NCBI GenBank assembly: GCA_900088475.1
Contig: FLMG01001983.1
Coordinates: 1 to 64,000 of the forward strand
Direction: 5' to 3'
DNA from: Hyphochytrium catenoides
Taxonomy: Eukaryota > Protista > Hyphochytriomycota
Length of the DNA: 64,000 nucleotides
Shown here: piece by piece, positions 30,980 to 40,900 of the stretch
Position numbering within the stretch: position 1 is the first letter of the stretch
How the letters are laid out: each line of letters begins with the position of its first letter
Made by a program: the position numbers and the translations under genes
The notes under the pieces: model-generated
What the model was told of the DNA's origin: nothing
Seen by the model: only the letters and a program-made list of their open reading frames with translations
Database searches by the model: none

Positions 30980-32359
30980 CTAGGCCTTGGAGCCTCTATG
31001 GGTCCGTGTCAAGCCCTCGTCTGCTAGAAGTGCCAGGGTCATCTTCTGATTTAGCGTAGCTTCGAAGAGCTCCTGCTGCCCAGACTCTCTGGCTGCCTCT
31101 CCATGTTCCTTTACATAGCTTTCCAGGTCCCGAAAGCTTCCGCTCCCAGCTAGAATGTCCCTGGCTAAAGGCTCTGACGACCAGGAGGAATAGCGCTTCG
31201 CAGTCATGGAGTCTAGAGTTCCGTCTTGAAGAATATATGCCGCATTACGCAGCCCTCTGGCAAAGGTATCCATGGCAGCAATATGCGCTATGAAGATATC
31301 AGCAGGGTTGATGGACTCTCTACGTACTTTGCAGTCAAAGTTAAGTCCTCCAGGGGCCATTCCTCCCATCTCTATTACCTTCTTCATAACCAGCGTTGCC
31401 TTCTTTTCGTCCATTAAGAACTGGTCCGTATCCCAGCCCAACATAGGATCTCCCGAATTGCAGTCTATCGAGCCTAACATGCCGTACTCCGCCGCCAGAA
31501 CAATATCATGCTCATATTCGTGCCCTGCAAGCGTCGTATGATTGGGCTCTATGTTCAGTTTGAAGTCCTTTTCCAACTTATAGTGATACAGAAAGGACAT
31601 CACTGTCTGTGCATCATAGTCGTACTGATGCTTGGTAGGCTCTCTGGGCTTGGGTTCGATAAGGAGCTGAAACGTAGCACCGATCTCCTTTTTGTGCTTG
31701 ACAGCCAGATGGAAGAATGCTGCAAGCTGGTCAAGCTCCGCCCTTGGACGAGTATTCAGAAGAGATTGGTAGCCCTCTCTTCCTCCCCAGAAAACATAGT
31801 TCTCTCCCCCCAACTTGTGAGTCACCTCCATTGCTTTTTTTACCTGAGCAGCTGCCCGGGCGAAGACTTTGAAATTGGGGTTCGTGGCAGCGCCGCACAT
31901 ATAGCGGGAATGAGAGAAAAGATTTGCCGTGCCCCACAGAAGTTTGACACCTGTCCTACAATGTGCCTTCAACATATGGTCAGTCACCTGTTCTAGAATC
32001 TGGTTCGTTTCCTCTAACGAGCTGCCCTCAGGAGCAACGTCACGGTCATGAAACGTATAGTAGACCACACCAAGCTTCTTGAATAGCTCAAAGGCAGCGT
32101 CAACACGTCGACAAGCGCCTTCGACGGTATGAGTATTTTCTTCCCACTTTCTTAAAAGGGTAGGCTCCCCGAATGGATCAGCCCCTGTCCCGCGAAAGGT
32201 GTGCCAGAAGCAGACGGAGAAGCGGCACCAGTCCCGCATCGGTCGGCCCAAAATGACTTCATCAGCGTTGTACTCCTTGAAGGACAATGGGTTGGACGAC
32301 TGGCGCCCCTCATAGCGAATGGTCGGGATCTCAGGAAAGTACTCGTCCGCAGTAGCCAT
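30980..32359 (-). CDS. xylA: Class II xylose isomerase, intronless
   Basis: ATG start MATADEYFPEIP. Motifs FWHTF, FHDRD, LWGTANLF, GGENYVFWGGREGY, IEPKPREPTKHQYD, NIEPNHTTLAGH, GWDTDQF and GGLNFD. Confidence 0.97.
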   Translation of the reverse strand: MATADEYFPEIPTIRYEGRQSSNPLSFKEYNADEVILGRPMRDWCRFSVCFWHTFRGTGADPFGEPTLLRKWEENTHTVEGACRRVDAAFELFKKLGVVYYTFHDRDVAPEGSSLEETNQILEQVTDHMLKAHCRTGVKLLWGTANLFSHSRYMCGAATNPNFKVFARAAAQVKKAMEVTHKLGGENYVFWGGREGYQSLLNTRPRAELDQLAAFFHLAVKHKKEIGATFQLLIEPKPREPTKHQYDYDAQTVMSFLYHYKLEKDFKLNIEPNHTTLAGHEYEHDIVLAAEYGMLGSIDCNSGDPMLGWDTDQFLMDEKKATLVMKKVIEMGGMAPGGLNFDCKVRRESINPADIFIAHIAAMDTFARGLRNAAYILQDGTLDSMTAKRYSSWSSEPLARDILAGSGSFRDLESYVKEHGEAARESGQQELFEATLNQKMTLALLADEGLTRTHRGSKA

Positions 32360-33012
32360 CTCCCCCAAAAGGTTGTTCCTCAACAATGCTTTCCCAAGCT
32401 TTGAAGCAGTGGGTGGACGCTCGTCTCTATCAATCACCCAGCTCGGCCCAGAGAACGTGATCAAGTGTCGGTCAGCACCGACGCTATCCTCTGACAATGT
32501 ACGCCTGTGCCTCACCTAATGCAGGCTTCTCCTATCCATGAGAGCTTCAGCTTATTAGCGTCTGTTGAAGATCTTTGCTCAGGTGTTTTGCATAGGAACA
32601 GAACTACAGACGTGCAAATAAGAAGCTTCAACCTGAGTGATCGCCCACCCATCCCGTTACAGTTAATGCTTTTTACATGAGAATCTACCCCGAAATGCCG
32701 CCCCACCCTACCCCATCATCTCTCAAAAACTCCAGAGTAGATGCGTAGGAAACTAAGATTTTGATCTAGAATTAGGTTATCAGTCCAAATGCAACTGTCC
32801 TGGAGTAGTACTGGACAAGACTTTTTTGAGTCTCGGAGCGCTGTGCCCACATCAGCTCCGCCCCGCTCCCTCGCGCGCTGATCATGATCAGAAGCCAGAG
32901 GGGAAGATGGACCTGCAGATTGAGATTGGGAATCGCTATCGCCAGCCAAGTCATGGAAGAGCCGAAGTAGGACACGGTACAAGAGCCACTGTCCGTTAAT
33001 AAGGAGCGTCAG

Positions 33013-36000
33013 ATGGAGCCAAACGCCGATGCGGCTGGCGGTACCGGCCCTCGGCAAGGACGAAGAGCTAATCGCGGGAAGAAGAAAGGATCAAGTGAAA
33101 GTGACAAGGGCCCAGAGATGCCTGTTGACAGAGATTCCTCGTTAACAGATCCTTCTGTGTCGTCATCGAGCCGCAAGGTGGGCGTTTGATCAATCTGTAT
33201 GATACTCGTCAAAGCATATACTCACGCGGTTGCTACATGTTAGAAGACAGCAAAAGCAGCCACGCTTAAGTCGGACCGTGACACGAGTAGACCCTCCAAA
33301 GATGGCAATGAGCCAAACAGAGAGCAATCTGGTCCTAATGTAAGCTCCGCAACCTCTGCTCACCGTAAGAAAACTGCTGGAGAGAAGGAAAAGCGATTGA
33401 GTGGAGATAAAGAGAAGGGCAGGAAACAAAGCCGACCGGGCTTTGAAGTCTATGTCCCGAGGGCCAGGGACGGGACTTCAGGACGTGGACAAACGAGAAC
33501 GATCACAGATTCTGAAAGAGAGACAGATACCGCAAACAGGAATGCTTCACCTGCTAAGCCAATCCGCGCTAGAAAGGCGAAATTGTCCCAGAGTCCAGCT
33601 AGGTCCGAGCACACCGCCACCAGGGAGTTGACTGAGGCAATGGAGCACATTCAGTTTATGGAGAAAGAGTTAGCCTATCGGCGGAGAGAGACGGAGAGAG
33701 AGAAGGAGAGAGAAAGGGAAAGACAGAGAGCTCATGCGGCTGCTGAGGAGAGAAGACAGCGAATAGAAGAAGAGAGAAGAGAAAGAGAGCGGAAGCTTCG
33801 GGAGGAAACCATCAAGAAGATTCAAGAACAAAATATTGAGAAATTGGCGCGAGCGGAGCTCATGTACTCTCTCCTGCAGAGTCACAAAGCCTCTACAGAG
33901 ACTGTAGAATATCCTGAGGCTGCTAGAATACCCAGCACTCAAAGAGGAAGGAGTGAGGCAGCGGGCAAAGACAGAGAAGCAGTGGAGGATACTCTCCCGG
34001 TGGCCTTCTCTGCAGCCGGAAAATCGGCGTCTTATCTTTGTGCTTGCGTGCAAAAGTGGGAGAATCGGTTAAGAGAGATGACTTCCGATATGCATGAGCT
34101 GAGGTATGTCCTTTCATTTCCATCACCGTTTGGTAGAGGATAGGAACGGCCTCTTGCAAATTTCTCTGTTATCTCGTATGTTCCCCTTGTCACCCTCTTG
34201 GGCCACAGCTGGCTCCTAACCCTACTTCGTTGTTGGGACTCACATCTGCCTTTGTCTCCTACCTCCTCTCGTTCCCTAGCGATGATCCTATGCAGGAACA
34301 GGCTACCTCTTGTCTTCGGACAGCTGTGCGAGAAGCCTATCGAGTATTGGTCACAGAATGGCTTCAATTCTCACATGAAAAGAACTTGGACCAGAAGCTG
34401 TGGGCGAATTGGTACAAGGAGATAGAGACATTGCAGAGAAAGCTCAAAGAGGCGAAGGACGTGGAGCAGAATCAGCGAAAGCTGACGGAGAAAGAAAGAG
34501 AAAGAGAGGCGGCCGCCCTCGGATTGACCGTGGGATTCTCCCTTCAGGAAAGCAGTCGTTTAAAGGATAGGCTTAGGGCAGTCATTAGTGGAGCCATAAC
34601 CTACTACTCCCGACTGGTCCAGTCCCTGGTGCACCTCTATCTCCAAAAGCGAGAACCCGAAGACAGGAAAACCCGCCTAGAAGATAGCAGCTCATCCTCG
34701 CCTTCAATGAAGGAAACAAGCGAGGATCTGCTGCCTTTAGCCAGGATAACCCTTCAGCGCACACTCATTGCGGTGGGAGATCTTTCTAGGTATAGCGAGC
34801 AATATAGCCCATCGGCTTCTAAGGACTGGACAATCGCTGAGCAGCACTATTGGAAGGCACTGTACCTGGGCCCAGGAAATGGAAAGGCGTTCAACCAGTT
34901 AGCCGTTATTGCGACATATAGAAGGGACCTACCCTCGGCCATGTACCTGTACTTTCGCGCTCTGGCGGCAACAAGCTCCTTTCCTGCGCGGGAAAATATT
35001 CTTTCTCTGGTTGAAAAGGCACGGCAGCAGCTTAAGAAGCTGCCTCCTCTGGGCAAGGGTGCATCTCTTGAGCAATGTCTCCAATACTTCGGTCTTCACG
35101 TCACAGCAACCGCTGGTGCTCTGTTTTCTCATATCGACGAAGAACACTTTGGGAAGCTTCTTTCTCGATGTCTTAGCACGAGCTCTCAGATGATACGAGC
35201 TTTGGAAGCTACACTATTAGACAGAGTGGACGCAGTACTCGTCAGCAGAGGATTGGAGTCTGCTCTTGGAAGGCGAAGTCAAGAGGTTACAGAAGGCAAT
35301 GAAAGTAGTGCTTTTCACGGCCTTCTAGCTCATGTCGCGCAGATCCTTCATCGTGTTCTCATCATTTCGATACTCCTGGTGCATAACTCTATTGTGAGTG
35401 CAGGCAGATGATTCGTTTGCTACTGTTCGTTGGCCTTTTCCGACACATTGCTGACATTGCAACCTATGTTCTTCGGTGGCGTGGCCTTCCTCACGATTCC
35501 CATTCTTTCTCCCTTCTCATTTCCTTCTTTCTTTCTGAGAGTATTATCTTAACATATCTCGGCTGCTCTTTCCGAACACTCTTCACCTGATTATGCTTAA
35601 GTCGTATGTTCCTTTCCAAATCACCGGTACTTGTCTGTGTTCCCATTAGGTCTTTGCAACATGTTCAGTAACCATCTCTTTCTCCTTTCATAGTCTGCCT
35701 TTGGCCTCCGCGAAGATGGAATGCAGCCTATAGTTTCCTCACTTCCTGCCGACTGGCAATCCGCTCCCCCGCTGGTGAACGCCCTGGTGATGGTCCTTTC
35801 TATATCGAACCGCATTCTTGAGGGGTGTGAGCACGCACTGCAAGCTCGCCGAGGCACGAAGGAAAGGGAGACCGGAGAGGATTATGCAAAGAGGCTCCTA
35901 GGCCCCGTCCTTACAGTATTTGACTGGCTTAGCATCAACTCTGAGCTTCTGTCGCTCGATCACCCTCAAATGACGACATTTAGGATGAAGTTAGTGGCTG

Positions 36001-37320
36001 TCCTCTCACTGATAAGAGATAACCCGGATGCTGATGGGAGAAGACGGACGGAAGGCGGTTTAGAGAATGGCAGTGAGGGAAAGAACCCTGCAGTTATCGT
36101 CGAAGAAGATTTGGAGATTGCTGGCTTGCTGCCTGTGGAGGCTGCCTTCAAAAAGAGGTATGAGAAGGAGTTTATGGAGGATCTTAAGCCTTCTCCTTCT
36201 CTTTCCGCCAAACAGCACGAGCGAGTTGTTCGGGCCCATAGATTTGCCTCATTTTGCGCCGAGAGGGGGCTCATCTACAGGGTAGACGGCAAAGAGCATG
36301 GGTATAGGGCCGAGCTGCTTCCCTCTGTCTCATCTTTAGGTCTGCTCGGTCTCTTAGAGCCATCGAAAGTGAACATTGCCACCGATAAAGTGGAAGAGAA
36401 GAATCCGCCTTCAACTTCTCCTCCTAACGCGGAAGATGAGAAAAAGAATGTGACGGATGAAGTGACGCAGGTTTGTCTGAGTAACCCTCCATTTCCTCTA
36501 GTCACTGCTTCTAAGTTTTGTCTCTTTTTGCCTTCTCTTTGGGTGTCAGGTTCTTGACAGCATCTTTCAGTCCTATCAATCTCCATCATCGCCTGTGAGA
36601 AAGCCTGAAGAGGAACTAGGGATAGAAGGCTCGAGGGAAGATTTGATGGTTCTTAATCCTGGAAATTCAGCTTCAGCACTGCAACACGCGGGCCCGCAAG
36701 GGCAGAGAACTAGAAAGACTTTTCCTTTGGCTTCTGAGAGGAAAAGCGTTCCTAGCTCATCTCTTGCTTCTTCAGCTCACTCTACCGCATCCTCTCCTTC
36801 GGTACAAGACCTCCTTCGTGCTCCCCAGGCACTTCCACTCATTGTCATCGACGCCCCAAACGTTGCGATGCGACATGGACTCAACAGTTTCTTCTCTTGT
36901 AAGGGCATTCTACTTGCGTTCTCCTACTATCGAAAGAGAGGACATAAAGTGGTCGGCTTTCTACCTGACTATTACACGCGATATGAGGAAGTGGGGAAGA
37001 TGAGAAGGATGGCCAAAGCAGGTTTTGACGTGGGGAAAGCCAGGATCCCGGACGATGTATCTCTTCTCCGATCCTTAGTGGAAGGTGGAGCAATCGTCGC
37101 CACTCCCTCTCAGGACTACGACGACTCTTACTGCATACAATATGCAAGGACTCATGAGGGCTGCGTAGTGACCAACGATCTTTATAGAGATCATTTGGAG
37201 AAGCAGGGAGGAAGAGAGGAGAAAGCGGCGCTGAGACAATGGCTAAAGACCCATGTTATTTCTTACACATGGGTCGGGGATGAGTTTCTTCCCAATCCAG
37301 ACTTCAGATTCCCGACGTAA
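33013..37320 (+). CDS. SMG6/EST1-like NMD factor with C-terminal Zc3h12a (Regnase/NYN)-type PIN ribonuclease (5 exons)
   Basis: EBM-like SRPGFEVYVPR. EST1/14-3-3-like NLDQKLW, LIAVGDLSRYSEQ and GNGKAFNQLAVIATYRRDLPSAMYLYFRALAA. The last exon has IVIDAPNVAMRHG...FSCKGILLA...DYDDSY...VVTNDLYRD. GT-AG introns near 33178, 34103, 35394 and 36470 join the ORFs in frame. Confidence 0.88.
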
Positions 37321-37937: not shown

Positions 37938-40900
37938 CTATGATGTCTCCCTTGGGAGACCCCATTCTGCTCTCAATCGCTCCTCGAGTTCTTTGCTAAT
38001 GTCCTCTGCGAGCTGGTGATACTCATCCTCATCTCCTATTGTGTCACCAATCTCGCCTCCCGTGCTTCCACCGCCCCCTCCGTGCAAATGTTGCGTCAGT
38101 GTTAAGCTCAAATCTTGAATAGAGGCCCGAAGGCCTTCCAGTGTTTGTCTAGACTCTATCTCTCCCCTTTCACATTCTTTACCTTTCTCTAAGGCCTCCA
38201 CAAGGTCATTCAGCCTTGTAACAGACTTCTCAAGTTCTTCTAATCTCTTCCTCTCGTCTAAAGAGAAGGAGAGAGAGGATAGAGGAAACATCACCGTCTC
38301 TGAACATCCAGATGGAAGTTCCGACGAAGGAAGAGTTTGAATGGCTTCCGGCGATAGTTCTGGCAAGCCCAGTATCTGAGAGCTATTGGGATGTGGAAAC
38401 CTATCATCAAAGAGTGTATCAGATCCAGAATCTGCGTCTTCTTCTCCTGGTTCTCCTGATCTCGATAAATCTGCCTTCAGCAGCGCCGCTACTTGGCCTC
38501 TCAGCGTTCTGTTCTCCTCCTAAAGAAAGCCCAGCATAGAGATATTACAAGTCATGGCATTTAGGGGCTGAAGGCAGTAGTGGCGCTCGAGGTGAAAGGG
38601 ACTTACTTGGATGGTCTTCATAGCCGCTTGAAGCTCTTTATTTTGAGTCTCCAGGCGTGCCACCTGAGCCTGAAGACTCTGAAGAAGTTACAGAGAAGGA
38701 CCGAAAGCAGGTCAAATCTCAACATCCCCCTAAGAGCCACTTTGATGGTGTTCTTACCAGGGAAAGAGGATCAACCTTCTTGGCCTTTCTTCCACCTTTG
38801 TCAAGAGGATATCGACGGGCAGGGGGAGCATAGGTCCAAAATGTACGGAGAGAATGACAAGGCACGTCAGCGGGAAGTTTACCTAGCTCACAGACAGCCA
38901 TTGGATATCACGTCAGCCCTATACCTGTGACGCCGGCTGCCCCAAAATCGGAAGGCGGAAGGCGAGAAGGTCCCAAATGTTTAGCGGAAGCCTTCAACTT
39001 CTTAACTGCTGTAGCTCCCGTTTGGACCATGGAATGAGCTTCAGTAGCTGAAATTGGGCCGGGCCTGGCTTTAGGCTTCGCCTTGCGTCCGAGTGCAGCA
39101 GTACGTGGTCGAGCTGGAGCCACCACCGATTTCGGGACACCGTTAGAGCTAAACCTTGTCGTAGCTTTAGCAGGCTTTGACGGAGGGAGTCTCGCAGATG
39201 CAGGGGTCAGCTTCTTTGATGATTTTTATGCAAAGATTAAAACGGTTAGGGAAGGGCAGGAGGAGAAGAGTTAGGGATTAGACTAACGAGGTTTCACTCC
39301 TCCATTCACGTGTCTCGTTATACCTGCTCTGTCATTTCACCTTCCCTCTTCTTCACGGCTTCAGAGCTAAGTTTGCTAGGCGTTGGTGCCTTCCCCTTGG
39401 TTGACAGGGTATTTGCAGAAGCCTTAGCTAGAGCCTGCTTTGTATCGTCCTGTTCTCGCACCATTCCTCGAAACTTTTCAGCACCATTAACGTCTTCCTT
39501 GTCTCTCTCGATCTTGGCGTGGCGTCCCTGTTTCCCCACCCAGTTGGCATCTGTTTCCAAGAACTCCTCCGTGATGCCCCAGAGAGCTAAGACTTCCCTT
39601 ATTCCGGGAACTCCCCCACAGGAACTCATTGCCTTCTTTATCTTTTTCTTTCTACGACAAACCATACTGCGGATAAACTTCGCTAGTCGGGGGTCTGATC
39701 GCGTAAAAGTGGGAAAAAATCGGCAACAGGAGTGGAGAGGAGATAGATATGATTGATTAGCTTCGGTATGCTTGTGATTAAGAAAAGTGATTGAGGAGCG
39801 GTCACACAGTGATCAGGCAAAACGGCAGCGAGCGTGCACGGGGTAGACCTCAAGAGTGTTCAAAGCAGCAGTGGTATCTGGTTCTGATGCATATAACCCA
39901 CCTGCCTCTCCATTTCCTTCAACATCACAAATGAGGAAGCTCTTATTCGTACGCATCATTTCCGCAATTTGTATCATCCCAGCATTCAATACCTTGTTGT
40001 TCAGAAGGAGGATCCCTGCGCAGTCGGTTGCGGAGTTGCTTTAGTGTTGATCCTCTGCCATGGTAGTTAGCATGAACCCATGGTGTTCCCATTGACAATC
40101 TGACCAATACTCCTCATTCTGTTTAGCTCCTCATGCAGCTCTACCTCTTTATCATCTTTGTTCCATGCAGGAGAGGACTAAAATTTACATAATTCATCCT
40201 GCCTCTATGATCAGACTAGGAGTCTCATACCGACTATCCATGCATCCTGGGCAAGGGTGGAACTTAGTTTTTTAGCAAAGAGCTCTCCTAGCCCATTCTG
40301 CGATAAGTCCAGAAGGACTAGTCCATAACCTCGAACATCTTTAGGAGATTCACCCCTTAGGCTCGAACTCCACTGTAGCTCATCTCTGCGGGCATCATGG
40401 GCCTATATTCAGAAAAAGGGCAAATGAGCTTGAGATAAAGGTATAGATTAGAGGTAAGGAGCCGACGCACCCAGCATCTATTGGGTTAACTGAGTTCTTG
40501 AGAGTGAGGCGCTAATAAGATTGTGGACTTCAAGGAAGTGAAAACTTGGAGACCACAGGTCGATGGGGAACAACAAGACCGTATAAGAACTGAGAGAGGT
40601 CTCGTTAGTGTGGTACCTTAATCATGCTTGTGATGGCGTGCGCACTTTCGTCGGTCAAACTGTTACCAGATAAATCCAGGATCGCCAAATTAGACGCATT
40701 CGTCAGGGCCGGAGACAGAGCTGCAAGTTAAGAAAGAGAGGAGATGAACTCAACACCAGGCCCATACTATCGAGTTGACATGTACATCTAATTGTCAGGA
40801 GCGAAACTCACTTCTCAATCCTGCATCTCCTAAACAACATCCTGATAGCGTCAAGCGCCGCAAGCTGGTGCACTTCGATATCCCCTAAGGAGGCACATGC

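What the first reader, a model, noticed from the sequence alone, without database searches (positions are those of the whole stretch)
33013..37320. SMG6-type NMD factor whose nuclease is a Regnase-1/Zc3h12a-type PIN rather than the canonical SMG6 PIN
Seen in sequence: one spliceable gene carries an EST1/14-3-3-like domain with SMG6-like motifs (LDQKLW, GDLSRY, NGKAFNQLA) and a C-terminal domain closely matching Regnase-1 (IVIDAPNVAMRHG..FSCKGILLA vs VVIDGSNVAMSHG..FSCRGILLA; YDD; TNDLYRD; SYTWVGDEFLP). All four catalytic aspartates are present. Known: animal SMG6 ends in a VapC-like PIN, Regnase-1 is a separate UPF1-dependent RNase, and a ciliate NMD nuclease (Smg6L) uses an NYN domain. Inference: this is a hybrid UPF1-recruited endonuclease that joins the two animal UPF1-dependent decay systems in one polypeptide, possibly the SAR-lineage NMD nuclease.
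Basis: partly seen in the sequence, partly recalled or inferred. Interest (0 to 1): 0.8.

Follow-up and report, generated by a model that had tools for sequence, protein, structure and literature searches.

The report
NYN-type SMG6-like decay nuclease gene
This is a real five-exon gene for a protein that joins an SMG6/SMG7-type adaptor domain to a Regnase-type RNA-cutting domain, but this design is already known as Smg6L, the nonsense-mediated decay nuclease of ciliates, and is catalogued in many protists.

Summary
Window 33013-37320 (+) splices through four GT-AG introns into a 1228-aa protein. It has EST1 and EST1_DNA_bind domains (a 14-3-3-like/TPR adaptor, closest solved relative human SMG6) and a C-terminal RNase_Zc3h12a NYN domain (100 bits). 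No PIN_4 match appears. All five Regnase-1 catalytic aspartates and Asn144 are present, and the fold model matches Regnase-1, ZC3H12B/C and KHNYN.

The "new hybrid" reading does not hold. Tian et al. 2017 (PMC5499736) described this architecture as Smg6L, with a nuclease that "resembles the NYN domain in Zc3h12a", and showed it is needed for Tetrahymena NMD. I found at least 60 public proteins with the same architecture. They come from oomycetes, ochrophytes, alveolates, Rhizaria, a haptophyte, Mesostigma and Rhodelphis, and several are complete transcript ORFs.

No RNA run was listed, so the exon 4/5 junction rests on splice signals and conserved architecture.

Two points may be new. The protein has a lysine where SMG7 has Lys66 and SMG6 has Tyr649. 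It also has an N-terminal motif, SRPGFEVYVPRAR, that resembles the EJC-binding motif of UPF3B and animal SMG6, which Tetrahymena Smg6L lacks.

Verdict: a new member of a known kind, of modest interest.

The parts
33013..33177 (+). Exon 1 (aa 1-55), basic/Ser-rich N-terminus starting at the first ATG of the frame
   Evidence: Sequence reading and splice model: donor aag|GTGGGC, phase 0. This junction is not confirmed by homology. An upstream exon is needed, because the exon 2 frame is open and homologous upstream of its first Met (M188).
33244..34103 (+). Exon 2 (aa 56-341): disordered basic region, EBM-like motif, Glu/Arg-rich coiled-coil-like stretch
   Evidence: Alignments to Saprolegniales homologues run across the exon 2/3 junction (for example q205-629 to P0182 and q127-402 to P0157).
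33427..33474 (+). EBM-like short motif QSRPGFEVYVPRARDG (aa 117-132)
   Evidence: It resembles the UPF3B EJC-binding motif DRPAMQLYQPGARSR (PDB 2xb2) and the N-terminal motifs of animal SMG6. It is the best site in the whole protein with a BLOSUM profile of 11 animal motifs, reached by 6 of 1000 whole-protein shuffles and 0 of 1000 N-terminus shuffles. A sparser log-odds matrix did not pick it.
34280..35393 (+). Exon 3 (aa 342-713): 14-3-3-like domain and first TPR/helical hairpins (Pfam EST1 about 34386-34808, EST1_DNA_bind N-part about 34836-35129)
   Evidence: Pfam. PDB: human SMG6/EST1A 4um2 at 5.4e-18 and SMG7 1ya0 at 2.5e-10.
34416..34418 (+). Lys388, equivalent of SMG7 Lys66 in the phosphoserine pocket (SMG6 has Tyr649 there)
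   Evidence: Alignment to 1ya0; PMC4132714; the column is K or R in 30 of 30 NYN-type proteins.
34788..34793 (+). Arg512-Tyr513 of GDLSRY, equivalents of SMG7 Arg163-Tyr164
   Evidence: Alignment to 1ya0; invariant in all 137 aligned family members.
35694..36470 (+). Exon 4 (aa 714-972): rest of the helical-hairpin domain (EST1_DNA_bind C-part about 35784-36143) and start of the low-complexity linker
   Evidence: Pfam. Alignments to oomycete homologues run across the exon 3/4 junction (q481-899, q496-900, q499-865).
36550..37320 (+). Exon 5 (aa 973-1228 plus stop): Ser/Pro-rich linker and NYN domain
   Evidence: Donor cag|GTTTGT at 36471, acceptor ...GGGTGTCAG| at 36549, phases match. An alternative acceptor gives an exon start at 36571. 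No homologue alignment spans this junction, because the linker is not conserved.
36838..37305 (+). RNase_Zc3h12a (NYN) endonuclease domain
   Evidence: Pfam 1.3e-28. PDB Regnase-1 3v32 at 4e-16. AlphaFold2 model pLDDT 93.6. The top 23 Foldseek hits are Regnase-1, ZC3H12B/C and KHNYN, and no SMG6 PIN is in the top 50.
36850..37191 (+). Span holding the catalytic residues D1073 (36850-52), N1076 (36859-61), D1163-D1164 (37120-25), D1182 (37177-79), D1186 (37189-91)
   Evidence: They align with Regnase-1 D141, N144, D225, D226, D244 and D248 (residue list from PMC5499597). They are invariant in the family alignment of 77 NYN-domain sequences (76 of 77 for the D244 column, where one row has a gap).

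Best explanation
One five-exon gene encodes a 1228-aa member of the Smg6L family, the NYN-type counterpart of SMG6. Its N-terminus is disordered and carries an EJC-binding-motif-like peptide. The middle is a 14-3-3-like plus helical-hairpin (EST1/TPR) adaptor with a complete Lys-Arg-Tyr phosphoserine pocket. A low-complexity linker follows, and then a catalytically intact Zc3h12a-type NYN endoribonuclease at the extreme C-terminus. By analogy with Tetrahymena Smg6L and animal SMG6, the adaptor and N-terminus most likely dock the protein on UPF1, possibly on phospho-UPF1 and the EJC, at a premature stop codon. The NYN domain would then cut the mRNA with Mg2+, and exonucleases would finish the fragments. 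Shown here: the domains, the catalytic and pocket residues, the fold, and the conserved single-polypeptide architecture in relatives. Inferred: the exon 4/5 junction, UPF1 and EJC binding, and the role in NMD.
For: Domains were found by Pfam and PDB searches. The gene model has canonical GT-AG introns and matched phases. The model is colinear with Saprolegniales proteins, and alignments span the exon 2/3 and 3/4 junctions. EST1_DNA_bind plus RNase_Zc3h12a occurs in one protein in at least 60 public entries, including MMETSP transcript ORFs marked 'type:complete'. In Saprolegnia parasitica a single uninterrupted 429-aa genomic ORF holds the end of EST1_DNA_bind, the linker and the NYN domain. 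The catalytic residues are invariant in the 77-sequence family alignment (one row has a gap at the D244 column). The fold model matches Regnase-1 and its relatives. The Lys/Arg/Tyr pocket is kept. Tetrahymena Smg6L, with the same architecture, interacts with Upf1a and is needed for NMD, including through its NYN domain (PMC5499736).
Against: No RNA run was listed for this DNA, so no transcript shows exon 4 joined to exon 5, and the junction lies in an unconserved linker. The Tetrahymena sequence itself was not on hand, so orthology to it is indirect: it rests on Stylonychia, an unnamed EukProt entry and apicomplexan proteins of the same architecture. Ciliate adaptor domains are too diverged to align with this one. 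No function has been tested in any stramenopile. Human EST1A/SMG6 also acts at telomeres, so NMD need not be the only role.
Confidence: 0.8

Rival explanations
1. There are two adjacent genes. One encodes a nuclease-free SMG7/EST1-like adaptor that ends at the stop at 36555-36557. The other encodes a small stand-alone NYN RNase that starts at a Met near 36646.
For: The exon 4 frame does run into a stop at 36555-36557 if the intron is not removed. An in-frame ATG lies upstream of the NYN domain. No RNA data are available, and no homologue alignment crosses the junction.
Against: All close relatives carry both domains in one protein, including complete transcript ORFs and one uninterrupted genomic ORF in Saprolegnia. 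The intron has canonical signals and matching phase. The gap between the two putative genes would be under 100 bases. The linker length matches that of homologues.
Confidence: 0.05
2. It is a fused Smg6L-type protein, but its main job is not NMD. It could act at telomerase or telomeres like Est1/EST1A, or as a general, regulatory or antiviral mRNA endonuclease recruited by other partners.
For: The adaptor domain family also includes the telomerase factors Est1/EST1A (Pfam names). About half of the Upf1a-dependent targets in Tetrahymena do not depend on Smg6L. Zc3h12a-family enzymes act in regulated and antiviral decay.
Against: The only tested protein with this architecture works in NMD through its NYN domain. 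The phosphoserine pocket used by SMG5/6/7 to read phospho-UPF1 is intact. An EBM-like motif points to mRNP surveillance.
Confidence: 0.12
3. This is the first reader's version: a lineage-specific, newly formed hybrid of an animal-type SMG6 and an animal-type Regnase-1.
For: The best solved matches are human SMG6 for the adaptor and Regnase-1 for the nuclease.
Against: The architecture is ancient and widespread across stramenopiles, alveolates, Rhizaria, a haptophyte, Mesostigma and Rhodelphis, and it has been published as Smg6L. The NYN-type adaptors lie on their own side of a well supported split from the PIN-type SMG6 proteins. There is no CCCH zinc finger, and the pocket has the SMG7-type Lys rather than the SMG6 Tyr.
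Confidence: 0.03

Closest known systems
Smg6L of Tetrahymena thermophila and its ciliate/apicomplexan homologues (Tian et al. 2017, NAR, PMC5499736)
   Same: Both have an Est1 DNA/RNA-binding (14-3-3-like/TPR) domain followed by a C-terminal Zc3h12a-like NYN nuclease with conserved catalytic aspartates. Neither has a PIN_4 domain. The window's NYN domain scores 150-166 bits against proteins of this architecture from the ciliate Stylonychia and from an unnamed EukProt entry.
   Different: Tetrahymena Smg6L is reported to lack the key 14-3-3 pocket residues and the EJC-binding motif. The window protein keeps Lys388/Arg512/Tyr513 and has an EBM-like motif. It comes from a stramenopile-type genome, a group not discussed in that paper. 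The ciliate adaptor domains are too diverged to align here.
Uncharacterised oomycete and ochrophyte proteins annotated 'RNase NYN domain-containing protein', 'Telomerase-binding protein EST1A' or 'putative ribonuclease ZC3H12C' (for example Saprolegnia parasitica XP_012200129.1, Aphanomyces astaci XP_009839385.1, Tribonema minus KAG5177425.1)
   Same: They are colinear over the N-terminal charged region, the adaptor and the NYN domain. NYN identity is 60-66%. The Saprolegniaceae share a '[LV]YVP' N-terminal motif.
   Different: Identity in the adaptor is only about 34%. The window protein is longer (1228 aa against 800-1000 aa). None of these proteins has been studied experimentally.
Animal SMG6/EST1A
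   Same: The adaptor's best solved match is 4um2 at 5.4e-18. Both have a disordered N-terminus with an EBM-like motif. Both have a PIN-like-superfamily endonuclease at the C-terminus, so the expected mode of action is the same.
   Different: The nuclease is RNase_Zc3h12a (PRORP group), not PIN_4 (VapC group). The pocket has Lys where SMG6 has Tyr649. In the adaptor tree all ten PIN-type proteins fall on the other side of a well supported split. The five PIN-type proteins whose source was looked up are opisthokonts.
Regnase-1/ZC3H12A family
   Same: The fold is the same (TM about 0.74-0.80). The five catalytic Asp and Asn144 are the same.
   Different: Identity is about 30%. There is no CCCH zinc finger, since the protein ends 8 residues after the domain, and no other Regnase domain. 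Substrate targeting must come from the adaptor rather than from stem-loop recognition.

Membership tests
Smg6L (NYN-type SMG6-like NMD nuclease) | Est1 DNA/RNA-binding / 14-3-3-like TPR adaptor domain | tested here: met
   Pfam EST1 at 5.7e-12 and EST1_DNA_bind at 7.3e-16; PDB SMG6 at 5.4e-18 and SMG7 at 2.5e-10.
Smg6L (NYN-type SMG6-like NMD nuclease) | C-terminal Zc3h12a-like NYN domain with intact catalytic centre | tested here: met
   Pfam 100.1 bits. D1073, N1076, D1163, D1164, D1182 and D1186 align with D141, N144, D225, D226, D244 and D248. The fold search confirms it.
Smg6L (NYN-type SMG6-like NMD nuclease) | Both domains in one polypeptide | tested here: inconclusive
   This is met in at least 60 homologues, including complete transcript ORFs and an intron-free Saprolegnia ORF. 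In the window it rests on a canonical in-phase intron. No RNA run was listed.
Smg6L (NYN-type SMG6-like NMD nuclease) | Orthology with the tested Tetrahymena protein | tested here: inconclusive
   The Tetrahymena sequence and the paper's accession table were not available. Ciliate (Stylonychia), unnamed EukProt and apicomplexan/chromerid proteins of this architecture match the NYN domain at 150-207 bits, against 63 bits for Regnase-1.
Smg6L (NYN-type SMG6-like NMD nuclease) | Binds UPF1 and is needed for decay of PTC transcripts | not testable with these tools
   This needs pull-down and knockout experiments.
Canonical SMG6 | C-terminal PIN_4 (VapC-like) endonuclease domain | tested here: not met
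   No PIN_4 match at E<=1. No SMG6 PIN among the top 50 structural matches.
Canonical SMG6 | Tyr at the pocket position (human Tyr649) instead of the SMG7 Lys66 | tested here: not met
   Lys388 is at that position.
Canonical SMG6 | N-terminal EJC-binding motifs | tested here: inconclusive
   There is one EBM-like site at aa 117-132. It is significant with one profile but not picked by another. Binding has not been tested.
Regnase-1/ZC3H12 family | NYN domain followed directly by a CCCH zinc finger | tested here: not met
   The NYN domain is present, but the protein ends 8 residues after it, and Pfam finds no zinc-finger family.
SMG7 | 14-3-3-like pocket Lys66/Arg163/Tyr164 and no nuclease domain | tested here: not met
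   The pocket residues are present, but the protein carries an intact nuclease.

The most novel reading that the evidence does not exclude
Unlike Tetrahymena Smg6L, the stramenopile-type Smg6L keeps a functional EJC-binding motif and a full SMG7-type phosphoserine pocket. If so, the common ancestor of SMG6 and Smg6L was an adaptor that read both the EJC and phospho-UPF1. Different PIN-like nucleases would then have been attached or exchanged on it: PIN_4 in opisthokonts and NYN in SAR, haptophytes and basal Archaeplastida. NMD in these protists would be EJC-coupled endonucleolytic decay carried out by a Regnase-type enzyme.
Probability: 0.3. Interest if true: 0.55.

Novelty: new member of a known kind. 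Interest (0 to 1): 0.3.

Why it matters
The finding adds one more stramenopile-type genome, possibly a hyphochytrid, to the range of the NYN-type NMD nuclease. Together with the census made here, it shows that Smg6L is not a ciliate or apicomplexan peculiarity. It appears to be the usual SMG6 counterpart across much of Diaphoretickes, while the PIN-type proteins whose source was looked up were all opisthokonts. The retained phosphoserine pocket and the EBM-like motif give testable handles on how NMD targets are recognised in oomycetes and their relatives, where no NMD effector has been studied. It does not reveal a new kind of system.

Tried and rejected
- **RNA evidence:** The look-up of sequencing runs listed no run, so read laying could not be used.
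- **Close relative P0001** (108 aa, 74% identical): no encoding contig is on record.
- **Accessions from Tian et al.:** the supplementary tables are not held, and the Kashima 2010 and Buchwald 2010 EBM papers are not held either. I took the EBM sequence from PDB 2xb2 through a search with the Branchiostoma SMG6 N-terminus instead.
- **Window motif against PDB:** a direct search with the window's N-terminal motif did not find UPF3B.
- **Log-odds matrix:** a matrix built from 11 animal EBM-like sites, with little smoothing, did not rank the window site first. A BLOSUM-averaged profile did. Both results are reported.
- **Word search limits:** it cannot see full-length relatives of any stop-free piece of this gene (the longest is 424 aa). 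I therefore ran the representatives search first and then used a full-length hit as the query. The window's own protein did not appear there.
- **Earlier notes of the scan:** they hold nothing on SMG6, UPF1 or SMG1, so I could not check whether this genome also has SMG1, SMG7 or a PIN-type SMG6.
Full report
**What is there**

The + strand between 33013 and 37320 holds five open stretches in shifting frames. They join through four introns with canonical signals and matching phases:
- 33178-33243, donor aag|GTGGGC, acceptor TGTTAG|
- 34104-34279, donor gag|GTATGT, acceptor TCCCTAG|
- 35394-35693, donor att|GTGAGT, acceptor TTCATAG|
- 36471-36549, donor cag|GTTTGT, acceptor GTGTCAG|

The spliced reading frame is 3687 bases with a single terminal stop, giving 1228 aa. 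A second in-frame acceptor would start exon 5 at 36571, making the protein 7 aa shorter.

**Domains**

Pfam finds EST1 (5.7e-12) and EST1_DNA_bind (7.3e-16) in exon 3. It finds the C-terminal part of EST1_DNA_bind in exon 4 (0.004). It finds RNase_Zc3h12a in exon 5 at 1.3e-28 (100.1 bits against a cut-off of 23). The only other hit there is a weak PRORP match, and there is no PIN_4 match even at E<=1.

Against solved structures, the adaptor piece is closest to human SMG6/EST1A (4um2, 5.4e-18), then SMG7 (1ya0, 2.5e-10). The nuclease piece is closest to Regnase-1 (3v32, 4e-16), ZC3H12B/C and KHNYN.

An AlphaFold2 model of aa 1060-1228, built on 29 family sequences, has mean pLDDT 93.6. Its best 23 Foldseek matches in the PDB are all Regnase-1, ZC3H12B/C or KHNYN (TM 0.63-0.80; 0.70-0.80 for the first 22). 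PRORP follows, and no SMG6 PIN is among the first 50.

**Catalytic centre**

PMC5499597 lists five aspartates for Regnase-1: D141, D225, D226, D244 and D248. In the HMMER alignment to 3v32, whose numbering I checked against those residues, they correspond to D1073, D1163, D1164, D1182 and D1186. N144 corresponds to N1076. Five of these six columns are invariant in an alignment of 77 family NYN domains. The D244 column is Asp in 76 rows, with a gap in the remaining one. The protein ends 8 residues after the domain, so the CCCH zinc finger of the ZC3H12 family is absent.

**Is it one gene?**

No RNA run was listed for this DNA, so the direct test could not be made. The indirect evidence is strong.

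A search of 1.84 billion representatives with the exon 3 piece returned 1019 relatives. Among the best 150, eleven carry the same NYN domain at their extreme C-terminus, and Pfam confirmed EST1_DNA_bind plus RNase_Zc3h12a in the ten that I scanned.

A word search seeded with the NYN part of one full-length hit listed 81 proteins. About 60 of them have PF11977 and PF10373 together. Their sources are:
- Oomycetes: Phytophthora, Nothophytophthora, Pythium, Aphanomyces, Saprolegnia, Achlya
- Ochrophytes: Ectocarpus, Chrysoparadoxa, Tribonema, Mallomonas
- Alveolates: Vitrella
- Rhizaria: Amorphochlora
- Others: the haptophyte Prymnesium, Mesostigma and Rhodelphis

In Blastocystis, Cyclospora, Stylonychia and Bigelowiella, Pfam marks only the NYN domain. 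Several of the proteins with both domains are MMETSP transcript ORFs marked 'type:complete', meaning both domains sit on one mRNA.

In Saprolegnia parasitica a single uninterrupted 429-aa genomic ORF holds the end of EST1_DNA_bind, the linker and the NYN domain. That result does not depend on any splicing model.

The window model is colinear with Saprolegniales proteins. HMMER alignments run across the exon 2/3 junction (q205-629, q127-402) and the exon 3/4 junction (q481-899, q496-900). Only the exon 4/5 junction, which lies in an unconserved Ser/Pro-rich linker, is not spanned. I put the chance of two separate genes at about 5%.

**What is already known**

Tian et al. [quoted passage not shown] They found a C-terminal NYN domain to be common in ciliate and apicomplexan homologues. 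They showed an interaction with Upf1a. They also showed that knockout, NYN deletion and a D820A (Regnase D141-equivalent) mutation raise PTC-containing transcripts. A 2018 review repeats this (PMC6173133).

The window's NYN domain scores as follows:
- 150-250 bits against protist proteins with this architecture
- 166 bits against a Stylonychia protein
- 63 bits against human Regnase-1

It therefore belongs to the Smg6L-type subgroup rather than being especially Regnase-like.

**Place in the family**

I built a quick maximum-likelihood tree of the adaptor region (137 rows, 286 columns, LG+G4, SH-aLRT support only). One branch with 95% support separates 42 rows from 95 other rows. The 42 rows are all but one of the NYN-bearing proteins, including the window's, plus 12 rows that are mostly fragments or truncated. 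The 95 rows include all ten PIN_4-bearing proteins. The one remaining NYN-bearing row (P0195) is a long branch lying just outside the 95.

The five PIN-type proteins whose source I looked up are opisthokonts: Basidiobolus, Trichoplax, Branchiostoma, a sea cucumber and an annelid. The five nuclease-free proteins looked up include a plant (Welwitschia), a glaucophyte (Gloeochaete), a heterolobosean and two unnamed metagenome entries.

The tree is unrooted and quick, with several long branches. It shows that NYN-type adaptors are a group apart from PIN-type SMG6. It does not show which state is ancestral.

**Two details that go beyond the published description**

First, the phosphoserine pocket. 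From the alignment to SMG7 (1ya0), whose numbering I checked, Lys388, Arg512 and Tyr513 correspond to Lys66, Arg163 and Tyr164. According to PMC4132714, Lys66 of SMG7 is replaced by a conserved Tyr in SMG6 (Tyr649) and SMG5, and this goes with weaker phospho-binding. The window protein has the SMG7-type Lys. The column is K or R in 30 of 30 NYN-type proteins, and Arg-Tyr is invariant in all 137 rows. Tetrahymena Smg6L, in contrast, is reported to lack key pocket residues. SMG1 was found in 7 of 19 stramenopile genomes (PMC5709506). I could not check whether this genome has it.

Second, a possible EJC-binding motif. Residues 117-132, QSRPGFEVYVPRARDG, resemble the UPF3B EJC-binding motif DRPAMQLYQPGARSR. 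That peptide, in PDB 2xb2, was the only PDB match of the Branchiostoma SMG6 N-terminus. The window motif also resembles the '(R/K)P-x3-(I/L)Y-x-P' sites in the N-termini of animal SMG6-clade proteins.

The evidence for this motif is mixed:
- With a BLOSUM62-averaged profile of 11 such animal sites, this is the best site in the whole protein (19.4). It is reached by 6 of 1000 whole-protein shuffles and by 0 of 1000 shuffles of the N-terminus.
- A sparser log-odds matrix did not rank it first, so the evidence is moderate.
- A looser [ILVM]Y.P[GKRPA] motif occurs in the N-termini of 8 of 37 NYN-type proteins, against 0.32 expected (0 of 500 shuffles reach 8). These include Vitrella and chlorarachniophytes.
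- Phytophthora species carry 'LYRPK' near residue 50, outside the stretch that count took as the N-terminus, and the Saprolegniaceae share 'RLYVPEAAP'.
- The two ciliate-type proteins fetched show no such motif, which agrees with Tian et al.

Whether the peptide binds the EJC is untested.

**Mechanism proposed**

The following steps are inferred unless marked otherwise. UPF1 at a prematurely terminating ribosome, perhaps after phosphorylation, is read by the 14-3-3-like pocket and the disordered N-terminus. The EBM-like peptide may add a contact with a downstream EJC. The tethered NYN domain then cleaves the mRNA with Mg2+, using the five-Asp site (shown to be intact). Exonucleases remove the fragments.

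**Organism and surroundings**

Earlier notes of this scan call the genome stramenopile or oomycete-like, and one calls it hyphochytrid. These notes are unchecked. My results fit them: the best whole-protein matches are Saprolegniales, at only about 34% identity in the adaptor.

Upstream and divergent lies a 511-aa xylose-isomerase-like ORF at 30980-32515 on the minus strand.

**Verdict**

This is a new member of a known kind. Interest is modest: it lies in the breadth of the family shown here, and in the retained pocket and EBM-like motif.

Noticed in passing
window 30980-32515 (-): A 511-aa ORF with a xylose-isomerase-like TIM barrel (PF01261, 5.3e-8) lies divergent from the Smg6L gene, with about 500 bases between the two starts. 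This is probably a shared promoter region.
   Followed up: partly
window 36549-36571: There are two in-frame acceptor AGs, giving an exon 5 start at 36550 or 36571 and a difference of 7 aa (VLDSIFQ). This may be alternative splicing or a simple ambiguity.
   Followed up: no
P0218, P0220, P0223, P0227 (chlorarachniophytes); P0008, P0183, P0196 (Aphanomyces): The family has variants. Rhizarian members carry an added SPRY domain (PF00622). Aphanomyces members carry a UPF0547 zinc ribbon (PF10571) between the adaptor and the NYN domain.
   Followed up: no
P0237, P0239, P0243, P0246 (Pelomyxa, Acytostelium, Planoprotostelium, Cavenderia): Amoebozoan proteins of 700-950 aa end in a similar NYN domain (74-130 bits), but Pfam sees no EST1 domain in them. 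Planoprotostelium still has an N-terminal 'RIYRPK' motif. They may be very diverged Smg6L proteins outside Diaphoretickes.
   Followed up: partly
L001:4682-5971 (+), Saprolegnia parasitica KK583207.1: One uninterrupted 429-aa ORF contains the end of EST1_DNA_bind, the linker and the whole NYN domain.
   Followed up: yes
window 37938-38366 (-): A 142-aa ORF downstream on the opposite strand has no Pfam match. I did not examine it further.
   Followed up: no
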